The notes beneath the pieces are model-generated. The model was not told the DNA's origin. It ran no database searches and was given only the letters and a program-made list of their open reading frames with translations. A DNA stretch of 55,588 nucleotides, filler included, from Platydemus manokwari (lineage: Eukaryota): NCBI GenBank assembly GCA_037951405.1. It is 5 parts of 5 records of this genome, joined end to end, with 100 filler letters (N's around TTAATTAATTAA, not from the genome) between each part and the next. Parts side by side here need not be neighbours in the genome. Positions count along the whole stretch, not along the records: positions 21,123 to 30,107 come from JBBMOY011319427.1; 4 more parts are not named here. One strand, written 5' to 3'. Both the position numbers and the translations under genes were made by a program. Positions within the stretch are counted from its first letter, which is position 1; every line of letters begins with the position of its first letter. Below are positions 21,123 to 30,107 of this stretch, in pieces.

Positions 21123-21819
21123 ATGTGCTACTGCTTGTTGTCAATGTAATCGATAAATAATTCTGGTCGCGATGTATTCTTGTGATTCTGCTTTGTGCTA
21201 CAATTCATAGAAACAGATATTCACTGCACATCGGCGGCCGCCGCCTATTGCAGAGATGCTGCAAGAGGCTGCGAGAAACTGAAAGAAGTGGTATTTGTCT
21301 TTGACTCACTCTTGTGCCACCACAACTCTTATTATTATTATATTATCATTATTATAATGATGATAATAATTATTATTTCTATTATTTGAGATCTGTGTTA
21401 CATCTCATCGGCTTTTAATTCTGTCGACAAACATTGATAACTTTATTGACGAATGCTCAAACGGTCATCTGTGTACTCTCTGTGGACTGTTAAGATGAGA
21501 TGATGCTGATGCCGATGATGACTATTTGTTTCTGTCGCTCTGTGTTATTCTTGTTATTTTATCACTACATCATATCAGTTGTATTTATTATTAAAAAATA
21601 ATCAAAATTCTATGAAAGCCACAATTACTCCTTTTTACCTTTACCGCCTTTCTTTCCATTTCTCTTTTTCTTACCATAAGTTCCAAGGCCTTTTCATTCA
21701 TTTTTAAAAAATAAATATTTTCAATCTTAAATACTATACATTGATGAAGTCAGTCCTATATATTAAATGAATGTTATGTTCTGGGTGATTTGATTTTTGC
21801 TGGTCCTAAGGGGCTTCAA

Positions 21820-21886
21820 TAATAAATATTTTAAAAAATGTTTTTGTTTTTTTAAAAAAAAGCCGGAATCATACTAATACACCTAA
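21820..21886 (+). mobile_element. Orphan mariner-like right end
   Basis: AATAAATA...AAAAAAAAGCCGGAATCATACTAATACACCTAA|TA. The terminal ATACACCTAA|TA is shared with the contig-end mariner TIRs; no partner TIR seen. Confidence 0.55.
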
Positions 21887-22421
21887 TATATTTTATAATA
21901 GCACTAATTTCACAAGGATTTCAATATAATAATTACTATTTTCTAGTCAAGCATCAATTATCATACAAATTATAAGCAGATTAAATGTTATCATATTAAT
22001 ATGAGATTACTTAGCTTCAATCCTCACAGTTAACGCATCAAGACTTTCAATCTTACTATGTAAGCATATATTTAATTTGAATATGTACATGTTACTGGTC
22101 ATTATTCCTTGAAGAAATATAAATACTAAAGCTATTTGAGAGGTAATCAGTTTGTGATCTAATTTCTAAATCATATGTGGTATTAATGATTTAATGGAAT
22201 CATAACCTATATATTTAATAAAAACGTAATTACCAATTCTATTTATATTTGCGATATGTGGCATATGATATTGTACCACGATTTCATAATCTAATTTTTA
22301 AGTTTGATAAAACCTAAAAAATTAAATATCTAGTGATAATTTTTTATTTTATGAAACCACTAACTCTAAATATTATAGACAAAATAAAAATATCCACTAA
22401 TTGAAGTTTTATCAACTATGT

Positions 22422-22526
22422 CAGAGGTGGCCAACTTTTGTGTACATAAGATCGATTTTTCATTTGAATAACATCTCAAGCGATCGACTAAAATTGGCTT
22501 CAAGATCGACCGGTTGGCCACCCCTG
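22422..22526. mobile_element. hAT (Buster/Charlie-type) MITE, 105 bp
   Basis: TIRs CAGAGGTGGCCAAC / GTTGGCCACCCCTG. Perfect 8-bp TSD AACTATGT (22414-22421, 22527-22534) with central TA. Internal GATCGA(C) motifs. Confidence 0.92.
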
Positions 22527-22889
22527 AACTATGTAAATCATCTGCATAACAGATAACTGTTTGAATTTTTTTCCCAACATTTCGTATATTTAATTAACTG
22601 AATTAAAGCTAGAAATGAAAGAAAATTTATTAAGATATCACATGAATTTGATATTAATAAAATTAAATATGTACTTATTTAAAAAATAAGATATTTGTAA
22701 ATAATTAAATGATGTATTATTAATGGATTATTATATTAATAATAATGGGTTTATATTTTATTATCCCACGTACTTTCAAATTGAAATCAAAGAAAGGTAA
22801 AACTTTAGAATGATAAAGACTAGTTTCATTATCAAATAATATTAATTTAATGTTTGTTTAAATATACATAAATTTTTTTCAGACTTGAG

Positions 22890-25800
22890 ATGTATAAAAT
22901 CTTTATTTAAAATTGAAATTATTTTATTGTATATTTAGGTCTTGTACCAGAAGTTTACAATTTTCAGTGAATCATTCGTTTGTATTAAATTTACCTAAAT
23001 ATAAAATATATGAAGTTAGTAATTACATTAATCTTTTTTAAATATATTATCGAGATTTTTTATTAAATTAATATATAATTAATATAATATAGACAGAGTT
23101 TATAAATTGTTTCAAAGAAATTAAGCCGCAATTGGAACACATATTAGAATATTTTAAAAAGTTAGTATGTATTAAGACTTAGTATTTTTATTGCTTTGTT
23201 AGATATAATGAAAGCAGCGTGGAAACTTTTAGAAAGTCTGATGTAAAAGATTACACTAAAACTTTTGTTATTAAAATATCTCAATATTTGGTAATTATAA
23301 ATTGTTGATTGGATGTATATTTCATTGAAATTAGAATTTATCAGCAGATGTTTGCTATGAATTATTTAAATCATATCTCTTAAATGACGGGAAACTTGAC
23401 GATACTGATTTACAAGTATTTGATTTCCATTATATCATTATTGATCTGAGCGTTTCGGATTTGGATATTTTTAGTCAATGCTTTGTCGAGGTTATAATAC
23501 GATATCAATGATGCAAAAAATCAAGAAATATTATTACGAAGAACGTTTGAGTTTGATACGATTAATCCGATACGCATTTTGTGATTGTAAAGACGATCTT
23601 CGAGTATTGTCAACAATTTTTTTAAACAACTTTGTTAAATCTTCGTCGAAAAAAGATCTTCTTCGCCAAGTAATGATTGGGTGAAACGATATTCGTTTAA
23701 TTGTTCATTAAAAGGTCGTCAAATCGTATAAAAATCTGATCGATGAAACCATGAAACGAGATCGAGCGAATTTTGATTATCGAGATGTAAGTTGTGAGAC
23801 AAAATGAAAGAATATGATGAAAGAATGATAAAACAAATAATAATCGATCTGTAGGATAATGCTGAAGATGAATGGACGATTCAATCTTTCGAGGAGCAAG
23901 CGGAATTGTTGGAGACGATTTTGATTGGTGCTTATTCCATGAAAGATTTGAAAGATGAGGAACTATTTCGGCAGGTTATCGACACGTTTAAGGTATGGCT
24001 TTACGGTATGTGTTTTGGGGTTTTTTCATTGTATGCGTTGCTAGGCAACCGGGTTCTGTAATGAGTTCAATGTCTCCAAAATGATTAGATCTAGCGCGCA
24101 ATTTAAGAGCATCAGCGAGAGAATCTGGTAAGCTGAACTGATTGGATGCTGTTAATGATTGTGTTTGTAGCATCATGCAAGCTCTGATTGTCATTGAATT
24201 GGCAGCAGTGAAATCAATGGTCGGGGCCAAGGAAAATCTGTCGAGGTGATATTTATTTGATTTGTGGCGGAAATAAATCATTTTACAGCCATTTCCTGGC
24301 CAATGGGAAGCTTTTAACGGAATTAAATGGTGCCATATTGAAGCTGGGATCGAAATCGTCACATGGCATCCTCATGTTATTCATGGCATTGCAACACAAT
24401 ATCTTCCCGATCCAGCCTCACAACTCACAAGATTCCACCAAATTAGCCCAAACGGCCATTGCCAAACTGAATGTATTTCGCTATATGGCCACCGTTTTAT
24501 CCAACAAGCCCTATCAGGTGAGATCTCGTCGATATCCGCATCAATTAACCGCTCACCTCTTCATAACGTGCAGGTATCAACAAGCGAAGGCTCCCACTTA
24601 GGATTCGTCGTGCATTGCGTGCTTTTCGATCTCGTATCGCTCTTATGCACCAATATCCATCTCAATTCGCTCGAGATCGTTGTTCGTCAAGATCTCGTCA
24701 AGGCAATCTGTATGATGTTGAGGGTGATTATTTCATCCAATCAAGTCGAGCCATTGAATAACGGGTTTATGAAGATGCTAGAGGATCTGTCGACCAGTAA
24801 TTGATGGCTATTTTCTAAGATTTTATTCGCTCTTTCTCGCCAGCTTTCCCGACCAATCTCGATATGTTGAATGTGCTCGCGTGTCTCGTCAATCAGAAAT
24901 CGATCGTAGGCGATAAACAACGCGATATTGTGAAGATTCTTGGAGATTTCGTGGACAATTTGTCGTGGTTCTGTGATGTGCGAAGCGTGGAACATGTGAA
25001 ATTAATCGATGATCACATCAGAGGTGGCGATTCATCATTATCAGTGAAGCATTGCCGATTGGTTCGCCCATATGAGCCCTATCACGGTGAGAGCAGAACG
25101 AGATTCGTGTTGGATCAGGAGAATGAGGGATATCTGGTGAATGACCACGCCATTTGGGCGGTAAAATACAGCGTTTGGGACGTGATTTTCGGCGAGATTG
25201 AGCTGTCGTGCATGCTGCTCGCTCAATTTCACAACGACCGCGAGATGTTCGCCAATCCAGTTGATTCGATTGGCACACCATTGCCATTCAATATCGGCCC
25301 AGCAAACGTCACAACGATTCAAGGTCAAATCGATCGGTTGGAGATCATTTTAGATTTCTTATTGGTCGCTCTGCAGGTAAATATGGCGATAACAGGACAC
25401 ATCGCTAATCGGTTTATTTATTGATTTGTATCGATTTATTCAGAACTCGCTCAAACAAGCTGTTGTGATCGATATTTTCCAGCATTTATGGCATCTCGTC
25501 GAGCAAGGAGCATTCTTTATCAATGGTTGCCAAGCAATCCTTGTCAAACTAATCGATATCGCCGGACGAATTCTCGTCACGTCGAAAGATGTTGGGCTCA
25601 TTTCGAGAATCGTGTCGGTGAGGAACTTGTTTCCAAACGCACAAGCATCGGTCGAGAGGTAATCAATTAAACCGCTTGTCGAGTTATTAATTGTTTTCTT
25701 GATTCAGAATCGTCACGGATCAATCGATAATCGATCAGTTGTGGAAATGCGATCTGGCTATCGCTCCAAACAGCAGCACCGTTGGCACAGCCAACATCGC

Positions 25801-28800
25801 CATTATCCGATCTTATCTCAAATTCAACATCAGCCTCGTCCATTGCGAGAAATATCTCGAAACCGAGATCGGTGTCATCCCGTCATCACTGATATTTGGC
25901 AGCATTATATTCGTCATCAGATCGGTGTTCGACAACTTGACGAAACACGCATTAACCAACAGTGCATCTCTCATCACGGATTTGGGTTGGTTTTTTGTAT
26001 TCTTTATTTGATTGGTTAAATTATTACAGACTGTTTGATTGGTTAAATTATTATTTTTTTTATCGATTTGATTGGTTAAATTATTATTTTTTTTATCGAT
26101 TTGATTGGTTAAATTATTACAGACTGTTTGATTGGTTAAAATATTATTTTTGTGGATTTGATTGGTTAAATTATTACAGACTGTTTGATTGGTTAAAATA
26201 TTATTTTTTATCGATTTGATATAATAATTTATTATAATTATTTCATTGATATATTATTATTATATTTTGATAGATTTATTTATAATCATTTAATCAATTG
26301 ATTTGTATTCTAATATAATTACTATTTAAAAATTTGTTTATTAACAATTTTATTTGTCGTCTTTTAAATATCGATTATTCAAAAATATCGATTATTCAAA
26401 AATATCGATTTCTCAAAATGTCGATTTCCTAAAATATCGATTTCTCAAGAATATCGATTTCCTAAAATATCGATTTCCTAAAAATATCGATTTCTCAAAA
26501 ATATCGATTTCCCAAAAATATCGATTTTCCAAAATATAGATTTCCCAAAATATCGTTTTCCCAAAATATCGTTTTCCCAAAAATATCGATTATTCAAGAA
26601 ATATCGATTATTCAAAAATATCGATTACTCGATTAATTATATTTGCTTAATAATTATAATCAATAAATATCACAAAATCAAAAACTTATTAACAAATTAA
26701 AAGTGTAAAATTAATTTATTGATTTTATTAATAGATAATAATAAAAATAATAATAAAAAATATAAATAATTAAGCTGTCGATTGCATGATTTTCCTCAAT
26801 GAAATTATGAGCATCAAGTCGAGATCATACTTGATGCTGTCCGATACACGAAAATCTCGGCTACAATTGATTCAACAAGTGACGCACGAGATTATCGCCA
26901 ATACTCCATCAGCAGTTAAAGTTATCCTATCCATGTCATCCATTGAGGTGGATACGTTATTGAAACAGAGTAATTTGTCCAATCAGTACGTATAATCGTC
27001 CAATAGTGTATTAAAGTAATGATATATCATATATCTATAGAATGTTAGCAATAAACGGCACTGAGGAAAAATTGAACCAACTCGTATGGATGGCTTTAAC
27101 ACTGGTCAAATATATTTTTATCGGCCCCAACGATTTGTTAAATGAAGAAGAAATCGTTGTTGACAGCGGTGCTTGTGTGTTATTGAAACTGCTCGATAAT
27201 GACGATCAACCAGAAGGCCAGCTTGCCAATATAACTCGTAAACGGCGATCGGGAATGACCAATTGCCAGCAATACGTATTGAGAATGCTCGAGTTCCTCA
27301 CTTATCCTTTCAGCATCAAGATTGCTCGCATGGCACTCGACATTCTCAAATTGCTAGTTCAGAACACGAATATATCGATTGTAGGCTGTCTCGGTGAGAA
27401 AACATCTCTCATCCGTGATACTTTTCTTCGAATCATCTCCAGTAACATGGAAGATCAGATTGTGCGATCGAATCTGTTTAATTTTCTAACTGAATGTGTG
27501 ATGCGTGGTCGTCATGGAGTGCTGCAATTGATTGGTCCCGGTAAATCCGAAGCTTGTGGCATCAATTGTTATCAGAGTTGTGTCGACATCATCAATAATT
27601 TCCAGGTTTTTAATAGCATGCATGTAATCAATAATCATTTCTACCCCCACTCAGGCAGATGATGAGGTGTGTGTCAAACTGATCTGCTCGGTATCCCAGT
27701 TCCTGTCGTCGCTATGGCTAAAAGATTGCTATGGATCTATCGATTGTTTGAAAAAGTAGGTCGAAATGAAATATGTGATTGATTAATCGATATGTGATGT
27801 GTGTTGCAGCGCTGATATCTGGTCGAGCATCATGACACCCACCAGAGAATTTATCACAACAATTGTACATCACCATGACAACGACAAGGATTCAAAACTG
27901 GCCCAGCCACCACCGACACCAACCGCTAATGATGATCGATTATTTGAGTTCATCGGAAACACGTTTGGCTTATTCGCCATGGAGCTCTACTCGAGCTCGG
28001 CGCTGCTCAAATCCAGTAGCGACAGCAATTTTATCAAATCTATCGAGTCAATACTGGGCGACGGATTGTTCTCCATGTTCCTGGGTGTGTTCCGCAAGCA
28101 ATTCCTTGAAGTGAGACAGCCTCGACTCGATCAATACATGAATATGCTGCTGACTCCTGTCACGTGGTGGAAAACTCTGCTTGTTATGACGCTCTCCATG
28201 AGCCCCGAATGCGGAATCAAAGGGCTCTCCTGTGGCGACGAGGTCAATTTGGTTGTTGACATATTGGAAAGCATTTCTAACCTGGTACAGCGAGAATCCC
28301 TGTGATCGATTATTGATATTTGTGACCTTTGTTTAGATTGGATCCTCTGCCATAATCGACAACAACGACGGTTTGAGCCTCATTCTCGACCAATTGAGTT
28401 CGTGTGTCCTCGAGATTGTTCACAAGAAATCCAGGTGAGTGCCTTTCCCCATTCTATGATAGCCGCCATATCGATTTATCCGCTTGTTTCCCATTAGATC
28501 ATTCAATGACGTGCAGAACTCGACTATTTCGAAACATCTGGTCAGCGTTCTCACCGCCTTGTTACCTTCTCGTGACACGGTTATCCATGTTCGACATGCT
28601 GACCTTTTCTCTGCTTGCGTTCTCTCATTGCAGAACTGTGTTGCAAATTGTGAGATTGTCTCAACCATTCTGGACCTCATTTGATTATTGATTTTCCCAT
28701 TTTTACAGATGCGATCCGGCGTGAAATGGAATCGCTGGCAGAAACTTATTTGTTTGTTCTCACCACGAGATTGGTGCCCGATAAGTTGGAATCAAAGGTG

Positions 28801-29868
28801 AGATGATAATGATTGATAAATAATCGATTAATCAATTCATTTGTTTGACAGACACTCGTTCAGGCTATTAGCTTATGTATAACTGTTGATATGACAACGG
28901 ATAGCATTGTGAATGCGGATTGGCTGGAAAGACTCGCAGATATCGGTGTGCTTCACAATTGCATCGCATTACTTATCGATTGTATCAAGGTATGGATCGA
29001 TTTTTAGTTGAGTTTAATTTTCATATAATTTTATCAATTTCTTTGATTTATTGACTTATTTATCGATAAAAATTAATTGTTTCATCGATTAAATTCTATT
29101 TTGATAACACAGCGGAACGATTTGTCATTGTTGGCACAATCGATTTTATTGTTACTCATTCGAGCTGCACACATTAATACCGGAGCAATGCGTATTATCC
29201 AATCATCGCTCTTATACACTTTGGAGACCGATTTTCTCATTCAAGAATCCAATCGCGACGTTGTAACATTTGTGGCACAACTGTTGAAGCTCGGAGTTGT
29301 TGTGGTGACTCAAAACGGACCAATAGCTCACAATTTTGGATTTCGGTTGATTCTATCTCACTGGGACAAGTTCAATGAGCTCGTAACAGAGGGCTGCACT
29401 CGAATTGGTCGGTCCGTCTCGTCTGTTGATGATTACGGGCGCATCAGTACTCTCATGGAAATTGGCCAATCATTGTTCGATATTGTTTGGCACTTGTTGG
29501 CCGTGAGAGGTGTTTGGTCGATATATTGGCCAGCTACAATTATTGACGAAATAGATCGGCTTGTCACTGTGTGCACCAACACTGTTGCTGTTGTCTTGTC
29601 CAAGCCTCTCACACTATTTCCACCGAATTCCGCTTATATCGTTCATGGAAAATCTAAAAACATCAAGCGAGTAGCATTTACATCTCACAGCCTCAAAATG
29701 AAACTCGATCACAGCAGCCCATTGGAAGATCCCGAAGAATCAATTGTTCATTTAAAAATGGAATTGGCATCATCTCGATTGGAATCAATTCTCTATCAAT
29801 TATTGCATTCGGCTTTACTCGTCTTTTCCAGATCCACCTATCTGACCAGTGAAACTTGCATTTATGAG
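22890..29868 (+). CDS. NUP188: Nucleoporin NUP188, multi-exon, 3'-partial (runs into the gap at 30108); exact start uncertain
   Basis: GT-AG bounded exons splice in frame (e.g. 22939-23014, 23093-23160, 23203-23290, 23335-23415, 23475-23669, through a last visible exon ending 29868). They match recalled vertebrate NUP188 in order: IKISQYLNL~LRISKFLGL; KIKKYYYEERLSLIR~KIADYYYEERTCILR; WTIQSFEEQAELLETI~WFVQCLREQSMLLEII; TAIAKLNVFRYM~TAIQLNVFQYL; WAVKYSVWDVIFGEIE~WEYSYSSWTLFTCEIE; SIVGCLGEKTSLIRDTFL...MED~SVYACLGNDAAAIRDAFL...IED. Confidence 0.9.
26007..26220 (+). repeat. Intronic minisatellite, 7 units of 27-33 bp with core TTTGATTGGTTAAA
   Basis: Directly visible; lies in the long NUP188 intron (~25985-26773). 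Confidence 0.9.
26366..26630 (+). repeat. Intronic tandem array, ~16 units of 16-18 bp, consensus AAAA(A)TATCGATT(T/A)YYY
   Basis: Directly visible; most units carry the palindrome ATCGAT. Confidence 0.93.
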
Positions 29869-30107
29869 GTTGTTATTGATTATTATTATTAATTATTATT
29901 AATTATTAATATCGATTATTTTTAATTATTAACATCGATTATTAATATTGATTATTTTTATTAATTATTAGTGATTATTATTAATTCTTAATATTGATTA
30001 TTATTAATATTGTTTATTATTATTGATTTTTTAATTAATTATTATTGATTACCAATATTGATTGTTTATGATTTTTATTTATTATTATTAATTATTATTA
30101 TTATTAT

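What the first reader, a model, noticed from the sequence alone, without database searches (positions are those of the whole stretch)
23700..29950. ATCGAT-saturated domain covering both exons and introns of NUP188
Seen: outside the long intron I count about two dozen ATCGAT palindromes in ~5.5 kb. They occur in coding exons (23739, 24899, 25005, 25329, 25468, 25552, 25723, 25730, 27374, 27739, 27935, 28975, 29139) and in many ~55-nt introns (23843, 25430, 27786, 28305, 28470, 28823, 28996, 29062, 29084, 29911, 29934). A random hexamer would be expected only a few times. Known: TATCGATA/CGATA is the DRE/BEAF-32 element bound by BED-finger proteins in Drosophila, and ATCGAT is a CpG-containing palindrome. 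Inference: a second code may overlay the protein code here, such as a chromatin-boundary, replication or pairing signal or a modification target. Alternatively it reflects a strong region-specific mutational or conversion process.
Basis: partly seen in the sequence, partly recalled or inferred. Interest (0 to 1): 0.7.

Follow-up and report, generated by a model that had tools for sequence, protein, structure and literature searches.

The report
ATCGAT excess in NUP188 introns
The six-letter palindrome ATCGAT is unusually common in this nuclear-pore gene, but most exon copies follow from the protein and its codon usage and 17 copies sit in tandem repeats, so only nine copies in short introns remain unexplained.

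Summary
The count is exact. They fall into three layers.

- **Exons (13 sites):** eight are Ile-Asp (ATC-GAT), four Ser-Ile and one Asp-Arg-Leu. Permuting synonymous codons predicts 6.8±2.2 (P=0.007). Dinucleotide-preserving swaps predict 9.7±2.2 (P=0.10). There is no convincing second code in exons.
- **Tandem arrays (17 sites):** these lie in three arrays in two long introns and are copies, not independent events.
- **Short introns (9 sites in 1,014 nt):** dinucleotide shuffles predict about 1.1 (P<2e-4). ATCGAT is the top hexamer of 4,096 there (Bonferroni 0.04). Nine of the 12 intronic TCGA are ATCGAT. The same-composition palindrome TTCGAA is depleted across the piece.

The Drosophila promoter element DRE does not fit. 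Only one site is TATCGATA, and none lies between -757 and +531 of the start codon. A branch-point role and intron homology are not supported.

I could not test whether the excess is local or genome-wide, because no other sequence of this genome was reachable. My best reading is a genome-wide, DNA-level palindromic word rather than a NUP188-specific domain. Interest is modest.

The parts
23208..29868 (+). NUP188 orthologue. Probable ATG at 23208 and first intron 23243-23334. Twenty further exons from 23335 to 29868 give a stop-free 1,577 aa. The gene continues beyond the piece.
   Evidence: Spliced model. Exon 27042-27605 matches Xenopus Nup188 7wkk_B residues 849-929 (E=2e-6) and human NUP188 5ijo_J (E=2e-5). 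Weak Pfam hit to Nup188_N-subdom_III. Protein atlas gives Nup188/Nup192 clusters.
23739..23744 (.). exonic ATCGAT, Ile-Asp (ATC GAT)
24899..24904 (.). exonic ATCGAT, Ser-Ile (xxA TCG ATC)
25005..25010 (.). exonic ATCGAT, Ile-Asp
25329..25334 (.). exonic ATCGAT, Ile-Asp
25468..25473 (.). exonic ATCGAT, Ile-Asp
25552..25557 (.). exonic ATCGAT, Ile-Asp
25723..25735 (.). two exonic ATCGAT 7 nt apart (Ser-Ile, then Ile-Asp; peptide QSIIDQ)
27374..27379 (.). exonic ATCGAT, Ser-Ile
27739..27744 (.). exonic ATCGAT, Ile-Asp
27935..27940 (.). exonic ATCGAT, Asp-Arg-Leu (GAT CGA TTA)
28975..28980 (.). exonic ATCGAT, Ile-Asp
29139..29144 (.). exonic ATCGAT, Ser-Ile
23843..23848 (.). ATCGAT in the 68-nt intron 23787-23854, 6 nt from its 3' end
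25430..25435 (.). ATCGAT in the 67-nt intron 25377-25443, 8 nt from its 3' end
27786..27791 (.). ATCGAT in the 54-nt intron 27756-27809
28305..28310 (.). ATCGAT in the 52-nt intron 28285-28336
28470..28475 (.). ATCGAT in the 63-nt intron 28435-28497
28823..28828 (.). ATCGAT in the 54-nt intron 28798-28851, within TAATCGATTA
28990..29112 (+). 123-nt intron with three ATCGAT (28996, 29062, 29084). The site at 29062 lies in the only full TATCGATA of the piece (octamer 29061-29068).
25986..26774 (+). 789-nt intron, GC 18%. Fifteen of its 20 CpG lie in ATCGAT, and all 15 are inside the two arrays.
26007..26220 (.). tandem array, period 27/33/57 nt, unit TTTGATTGGTTAAATTATTA plus either CAGACTG or T-run-ATCGA; 3 ATCGAT
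26366..26626 (.). tandem array, period 17 nt, about 15.6 copies, unit AAATATCGATTTYYCAA; 12 ATCGAT. The variant units are not CpG-transition products.
29873..30107 (.). decayed AT-rich array (period 10/13/23 nt) at the start of the last intron; 2 ATCGAT and several ATTGAT; runs off the piece

Best explanation
The 'saturated domain' is a composite, and most likely not a property of NUP188 in particular. (1) Shown: exon copies are mainly a by-product of what the protein encodes. They arise from Ile-Asp, Ser-Ile and Asp-Arg-Leu read with this gene's CpG-tolerant codon usage, in which ATC, GAT, TCG and CGA are all preferred. (2) Shown: 17 copies were made by tandem duplication of three AT-rich units that each carry the word. 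(3) Shown: what survives every control is a hexamer-specific excess in short introns. Nine of 12 intronic TCGA are ATCGAT, and flanks lean towards the symmetric tA-ATCGAT-Ta. (4) Inferred: this residue reflects a word used throughout the genome's transcribed regions. I take it to be read on double-stranded DNA by a palindrome-recognising factor, such as a BED-finger/DREF-like, CUT-like or methyl-CpG-binding reader. In AT-rich introns such a site would be kept against AT-biased decay. Slippage would occasionally amplify it into arrays.
For: Exons: 13 observed against 6.8±2.2 (P=0.007) under synonymous permutation, and against 9.7±2.2 (P=0.10) under dinucleotide-preserving swaps. Eight of 13 Ile-Asp dipeptides are ATC-GAT, against 4.4 expected (P=0.04). 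Arrays: TRF reports periods of 17, 33/57 and about 23 nt. Short introns: 9 against 1.08±0.98 (P<2e-4), and 2.5 under an order-2 model (P=0.001). ATCGAT is the top hexamer of 4,096 there, Bonferroni 0.04. Specificity: ATCGAT 24 against TTCGAA 2 (5.4 expected), AACGTT 1 and TACGTA 2 in the array-masked piece. One-flank variants such as ATCGAA, TTCGAT and CTCGAT are essentially absent from introns. Flank symmetry: -2 T in 14/24, -1 A in 11/24, +1 T in 12/24 and +2 A in 10/24. Introns hold more than other non-coding DNA: 9 in 1,014 nt against 1 in 1,940 nt, P=4e-4. Precedents: the DRE word ATCGATA is very abundant in Drosophila even outside its promoter peak (PMC1779564). ATCGAT is the CDP/CUT site (PMC2605249). 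ATCGAT is the commonest methyl-CpG context in Bombyx and is bound by MBD2/3 (PMC7820559).
Against: No other sequence of this genome was available, so 'genome-wide' is an inference. The intronic signal rests on nine sites in seven introns. Per CpG, the intron versus other non-coding contrast is only P=0.08. Exons also show a general CpG and TCGA excess at codon junctions (264 against 246; 59 against 43). That pattern looks like a broad compositional force rather than a site-specific one. Order-3 and order-4 Markov models trained on the introns themselves absorb the signal, although they are overfitted by the motif. No binding protein, methylation or accessibility data exist here.
Confidence: 0.4

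Rival explanations
1. The excess is neutral and compositional. In a genome without germline CpG methylation, a context-dependent mutation, repair or gene-conversion bias raises CpG, TCGA and finally ATCGAT everywhere. Nothing reads the word.
For: CpG observed/expected is 1.2 to 1.3 in exons and short introns. CpG is favoured across codon junctions, at 1.20 observed/expected. CpG and TCGA exceed codon-permuted expectation. ATCGAT is the commonest CpG hexamer in every partition, including upstream. The transition neighbours ATTGAT, ATCAAT and ATTAAT are also enriched in introns (ATYRAT 23 against 6.7), whereas transversion neighbours are absent.
Against: The specificity extends over six bases. 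TTCGAA, which has the same composition, is depleted (2 against 5.4). Nine of 12 intronic TCGA carry both outer bases. Other AT-rich non-coding DNA in the piece holds 1 site in 1,940 nt. ATCGAT (9) outnumbers ATTGAT (5) in introns despite the AT-rich setting.
Confidence: 0.27
2. A chromatin boundary, pairing, replication or modification code is laid over this particular gene or region, exons included.
For: Density is high along about 6 kb of gene and low in the 2 kb upstream. Three ATCGAT-bearing arrays lie within one gene.
Against: The exon signal is not significant after dinucleotide control. Apparent clustering near exon edges vanishes once the protein sequence is taken into account (P=0.49). 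The first 530 nt of the gene and several stretches of 600 to 800 nt have no site. The only comparator is 2 kb of lower-GC DNA.
Confidence: 0.08
3. The word is a modification target. ATCGAT would be a preferred site of gene-body 5mC (as in Bombyx) or of another methylation such as 6mA at its ApT steps, and would be retained for that reason.
For: [quoted passage not shown] The word is the ClaI-type palindrome. NUP188 is a housekeeping-type gene, the class that invertebrate gene-body methylation prefers (established knowledge).
Against: Germline-methylated gene bodies lose CpG. Here CpG observed/expected is 1.2 to 1.3 in the gene and 0.86 upstream, which is the opposite pattern. The 17-nt array shows no CpG-transition variants among its units. 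No read-level data were obtainable.
Confidence: 0.1
4. The word acts at the RNA level. AUCGAU would be a branch-point-like or intronic splicing signal in very short introns.
For: Eight of nine intronic sites lie in the 3' half of their intron, and five have the A at -20 to -28. Some introns lack any yUnAy motif.
Against: C stands at the position where the branch-point consensus requires U. Five of nine sites in the -15 to -35 window is no more than the 48% of positions available there. Two sites are 6 to 8 nt from the 3' end. The symmetric flanks and the exon and array copies do not suit a strand-specific RNA signal.
Confidence: 0.06

Closest known systems
Drosophila DRE (TATCGATA, DREF) and BEAF-32 CGATA clusters
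   Same: Both share the ATCGAT core. The 17-nt array is an extreme cluster of TATCG/CGATA (36 TATCG and 21 CGATA in the piece). The DRE word is also abundant away from promoters in Drosophila (PMC1779564).
   Different: Only 1 of 41 sites is the full octamer. There is no site from -757 to +531 of the start codon, whereas DRE peaks near the transcription start. The sites here are in introns and the gene body. The presence of DREF or BEAF in this organism is unknown.
CUT/ONECUT (CDP/Cux, ceh-44 type) homeodomain sites
   Same: ATCGAT is the annotated CDP/CUT site (PMC2605249). Its relatives ATTGAT and ATCAAT are also enriched in the introns. One array also carries GATTGG, the complement of CCAAT.
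   Different: Nothing links this housekeeping gene to CUT targets. The resemblance rests on the word alone, and the AT-rich context makes such words easy to find.
Methyl-CpG context ATCGAT bound by MBD2/3-Tip60 in Bombyx gene bodies
   Same: It is the same hexamer, located in the gene body and linked to expression (PMC7820559).
   Different: CpG is not depleted in this gene, so germline methylation is unlikely here. There are no methylation data.
Ordinary intronic minisatellites
   Same: These are head-to-tail arrays of 17- to 57-nt AT-rich units in long introns, with decayed copies.
   Different: All three substantial arrays in the piece carry the same palindrome or its ATTGAT derivative, although their units are unrelated.

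Membership tests
DRE/DREF promoter element | 8-bp palindrome TATCGATA | tested here: not met
   1 of 41 sites (octamer at 29061) is TATCGATA. Six are ATCGATA.
DRE/DREF promoter element | clustered within about 100-200 bp of the transcription start | tested here: not met
   The nearest sites lie at -757 and +531 from the probable ATG at 23208. The transcription start itself is not mapped.
DRE/DREF promoter element | a DREF (BED-finger) protein in the proteome | not testable with these tools
BEAF-32 insulator site | clusters of three or more CGATA within about 100-200 bp | tested here: met
   The 17-nt array 26366-26626 carries 12 ATATCGATT units.
BEAF-32 insulator site | located between genes or at promoters, with the BEAF-32 protein present | tested here: not met
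   The clusters lie inside introns of one gene. The protein could not be checked.
CUT/ONECUT binding site | ATCGAT or ATTGAT core | tested here: met
   In short-intron interiors ATCGAT is 9 against 1.3, ATTGAT 5 against 2.6 and ATCAAT 5 against 1.0.
CUT/ONECUT binding site | bound by a CUT homeodomain protein, with target genes regulated | not testable with these tools
   No binding or expression data exist.
Spliceosomal branch point | yUnAy with U at -2, placed about 15-35 nt from the 3' splice site | tested here: not met
   UCGAU has C at -2. Five of nine sites fall in the window, against 48% of positions available.
Introner or repeat-derived introns | introns homologous to one another | tested here: not met
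   The best pairwise local score is 26, against a null 90th percentile of 25.
Germline-methylated gene body | CpG depletion relative to flanks | tested here: not met
   CpG observed/expected is 1.20 in exons, 1.27 in short introns and 0.86 upstream.
Codon-usage by-product (exon copies) | count reproduced by synonymous shuffles that keep protein, codon usage and dinucleotides | tested here: met
   13 against 9.7±2.2, P=0.10. Without the dinucleotide constraint it is 6.8±2.2, P=0.007.
Minisatellite | head-to-tail copies detected by TRF | tested here: met
   Arrays at 26007-26220, 26366-26626 and 29873-30107.
NUP188 | collinear sequence similarity to solved Nup188 | tested here: met
   Exon 27042-27605 matches 7wkk_B residues 849-929 (E=2e-6) and 5ijo_J (E=2e-5). 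Its position in the model (about aa 868-949) is collinear. The Pfam hit is below the gathering score.

The most novel reading that the evidence does not exclude
ATCGAT is an intragenic chromatin word. It would be a palindromic site kept by selection inside the very short introns of housekeeping genes and amplified into intronic arrays. A dimeric DNA-binding factor (DREF/ZBED-like, CUT-like or an MBD-type reader) would read it. This gene-body counterpart of the promoter-proximal DRE has not been described.
Probability: 0.2. Interest if true: 0.6.

Novelty: new member of a known kind. Interest (0 to 1): 0.3.

Why it matters
If the intronic excess holds genome-wide and the sites are conserved, short introns in this compact AT-rich animal genome would carry a DNA-level regulatory or chromatin word. 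That would bear on why minimal introns keep particular sequences. If it is only a genome-wide oligonucleotide bias, it is a compositional footnote. In that case its main use is as a caution: codon usage and tandem arrays can make a motif look like an overlaid code.

Tried and rejected
- **More sequence from this genome or a relative.**
  - A metagenome scan with the last-exon alignment found no relative.
  - A metagenome scan for three ATATCGATT at 16-20 nt spacing gave 43 unrelated contigs that resemble the window only inside their arrays. No control pattern could be run, so this says nothing about prevalence.
- **Reads.** Read laying placed nothing from run X1 and one identical 258-nt contig from X2, so no variants were seen.
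- **RNA genes.** Rfam and tRNA scans found none.
- **Exon-edge clustering.** Seven of 13 exonic sites lie within 30 nt of an exon edge, which looked interesting. The null given the protein sequence is 0.50, so P=0.49.
- **Branch-point placement** was rejected.
- **Intron homology or an introner origin** was rejected.
- **Literature.** I found no report of genome-wide ATCGAT excess in introns. A search for TAATCGATTA returned only unrelated papers, apparently incidental matches.
- **Organism.** It was not identified. Run names are coded, and the only homologue of the last exon is an unnamed 50%-identical fragment.
Full report
**Observation.** An exact search finds 41 ATCGAT in the piece 21123-30107. 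Whole-source dinucleotide shuffles predict 8.7±2.7. The piece is AT-rich. GC is about 43% in exons, 32% in short introns and 18-26% in the long intron and upstream DNA. CpG is not depleted, at 1.30 observed/expected overall.

**The gene.**
- I built a spliced model on the + strand: 20 exons from 23335 to 29868, with 18 short introns of 35-123 nt and one 789-nt intron. All introns are GT-AG, and the model reads 1,577 aa without a stop.
- A probable ATG lies at 23208, followed by a 92-nt intron. That reading comes from the sequence.
- The last exon ends where its only database homologue, P0001 (50% identity), also leaves the shared reading frame. A further AT-rich intron then runs off the piece.
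- Exon 27042-27605 matches Xenopus Nup188 (7wkk_B, residues 849-929, E=2e-6) and human NUP188 (5ijo_J, E=2e-5), collinear with its place in the model.
- Pfam gives a sub-threshold Nup188_N-subdom_III hit, and the protein atlas gives Nup188/Nup192 clusters.
- Exons were searched one by one by reference. The joined model was used only in local scripts for codon permutation. A database search with the joined protein was left out.

**Three layers**.
- Exons hold 13 sites in 4,731 nt.
- Short introns hold 9 in 1,014 nt.
- The 789-nt intron holds 15, all of them inside two tandem arrays.
- The last intron holds 2, inside a decayed array.
- The upstream 2,085 nt hold 2.

**Exons.**
- Eight sites are Ile-Asp (ATC GAT), four are Ser-Ile (xxA TCG ATx) and one is Asp-Arg-Leu. 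ATC, GAT, TCG and CGA are each the preferred or co-preferred codon for their amino acid.
- Permuting synonymous codons, which keeps the protein and the codon usage, predicts 6.8±2.2 (P=0.007). Swaps that also keep all dinucleotides predict 9.7±2.2 (P=0.10).
- The protein allows 33 positions, and 13 are used. Eight of 13 Ile-Asp dipeptides are ATC-GAT, against 4.4 expected (P=0.04).
- CpG (264 against 246) and TCGA (59 against 43) also exceed the codon-permuted expectation. The exons therefore show a general liking for C|G codon junctions rather than a hexamer-level code.
- Apparent clustering near exon edges (7 of 13 within 30 nt) disappears once the protein sequence is taken into account: the null is 0.50, P=0.49.

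**Arrays.** TRF finds three substantial arrays.
- 26007-26220: period 27/33/57 nt, unit with GATTGGTTAA, 3 sites.
- 26366-26626: period 17 nt, about 15.6 copies of AAATATCGATTTYYCAA, 12 sites.
- 29873-30107: period about 23 nt, 2 ATCGAT plus several ATTGAT.
- These 17 sites are copies, not independent events.
- All three unrelated units carry the word or its ATTGAT derivative.
- The variant units of the 17-nt array are not CpG-transition products.

**Short introns.**
- Nine sites fall in 7 of 18 introns. Dinucleotide shuffles predict 1.08±0.98 (0 of 5,000 shuffles reach 9). An order-2 model predicts 2.5 (P=0.001).
- Order-3 and order-4 models trained on the same 1 kb absorb the signal. They are largely fitted to the motif itself.
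- In intron interiors ATCGAT is the most over-represented of all 4,096 hexamers (9 against 1.3, P=1e-5, Bonferroni 0.04).
- Nine of 33 intronic CpG and 9 of 12 intronic TCGA lie in ATCGAT. One-flank variants are essentially absent.
- In the array-masked piece, ATCGAT occurs 24 times. TTCGAA occurs 2 times (5.4 expected), AACGTT once and TACGTA twice. The effect is therefore not just 'CpG in an A/T context'.
- With arrays masked the piece has 24 sites, against 7.2, 12.9, 13.9 and 15.7 for Markov orders 1 to 4.
- The transition neighbours ATTGAT, ATCAAT and ATTAAT are also enriched in introns (ATYRAT 23 against 6.7), and the transversion neighbours are absent.
- Flanks lean towards the symmetric tA-ATCGAT-Ta.
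- Other AT-rich non-coding DNA in the piece (1.65 kb upstream intergenic plus about 0.3 kb of unique long-intron sequence) holds 1 site in 1,940 nt. The contrast with short introns is P=4e-4 per nucleotide but only P=0.08 per CpG.

**Explanations tested.**
- *DRE/BEAF:* only one site is TATCGATA, and there is no site between -757 and +531 of the ATG. In Drosophila the element peaks near the transcription start, although it is also abundant elsewhere (PMC1779564). The 17-nt array does form an extreme CGATA cluster.
- *Branch point:* the word has C where U is required, and 5 of 9 sites in the -15 to -35 window matches the 48% of positions available.
- *Shared descent of introns:* pairwise scores do not exceed shuffles.
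- *Gene-body methylation:* ATCGAT is the commonest methyl-CpG context in Bombyx and is bound by MBD2/3 (PMC7820559). Here, though, CpG is enriched in the gene (1.2-1.3) and lower upstream (0.86), the opposite of a methylated gene body.
- *CUT/CDP sites:* they share the core (PMC2605249), but nothing else links them to this gene.

**What could not be done.**
- The key question is whether the excess is local or genome-wide, and it needs other sequence from this genome.
- Both metagenome scans failed to give a relative.
- Read laying gave no usable coverage, and run names are coded.
The better matches to animal than to fungal Nup188 structures and the very short GT-AG introns point to a small-genome animal, but that is an inference.

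**Verdict.** The 'saturated domain covering exons and introns' dissolves into three things: codon-usage by-products, tandem-array copies, and a genuine but small (nine-site) hexamer-specific excess in short introns.
- My best reading (0.4) is a genome-wide DNA-level palindromic word rather than a NUP188-specific overlay.
- A purely neutral compositional cause (0.27) is the main rival.
- Interest is modest, pending a genome-wide count.

Noticed in passing
window 22414-22534: A small hAT-like MITE. It has 14-nt terminal inverted repeats, CAGAGGTGGCCAAC and GTTGGCCACCCCTG (22422-22435 and 22513-22526). An 8-bp direct duplication, AACTATGT, flanks it (22414-22421 and 22527-22534). It folds as a hairpin (-34.2 kcal/mol, z=-3.2). 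It contains three GATCGA-type words, including the only intergenic ATCGAT (22451). BED fingers derive from hAT transposases, so the shared core may be worth a look.
   Followed up: partly
window 23491-23525 and 23670-23714: Very short predicted introns (35 and 45 nt) are needed to keep the reading frame open. The 35-nt intron has a weak donor (GTTATA). There is no RNA evidence.
   Followed up: no
window 26007-26220: Each unit of the array carries GATTGG, the complement of CCAAT, next to TTAA and ATTA, and in some units next to ATCGAT. GATTGG is the most over-represented hexamer of the whole piece under an order-3 model (18 against 5.7).
   Followed up: no
window 21123-21560: This stretch has higher GC (35%) and a GGCGGCCGCCGCC run at about 21232-21245. 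It also has a (TTA)n/ATT-rich microsatellite at 21329-21386. It may be the end of a neighbouring gene or a UTR. No clear reading frame was found.
   Followed up: no
loci L001-L043: Tandem arrays of three or more ATATCGATT at 16-20 nt spacing occur in 43 unrelated metagenome contigs (GC 20-56%), each with its own spacer sequence. No control pattern was run, so it is unclear whether this palindrome is unusually prone to sit in arrays.
   Followed up: partly
window 23335-29868 (coding sequence): CpG is favoured rather than avoided at codon junctions (3-1 observed/expected 1.20; 143 of 264 CpG). TCG is the top Ser codon and CGA the top Arg codon. This is consistent with a lineage that lacks germline CpG methylation of this gene.
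   Followed up: partly
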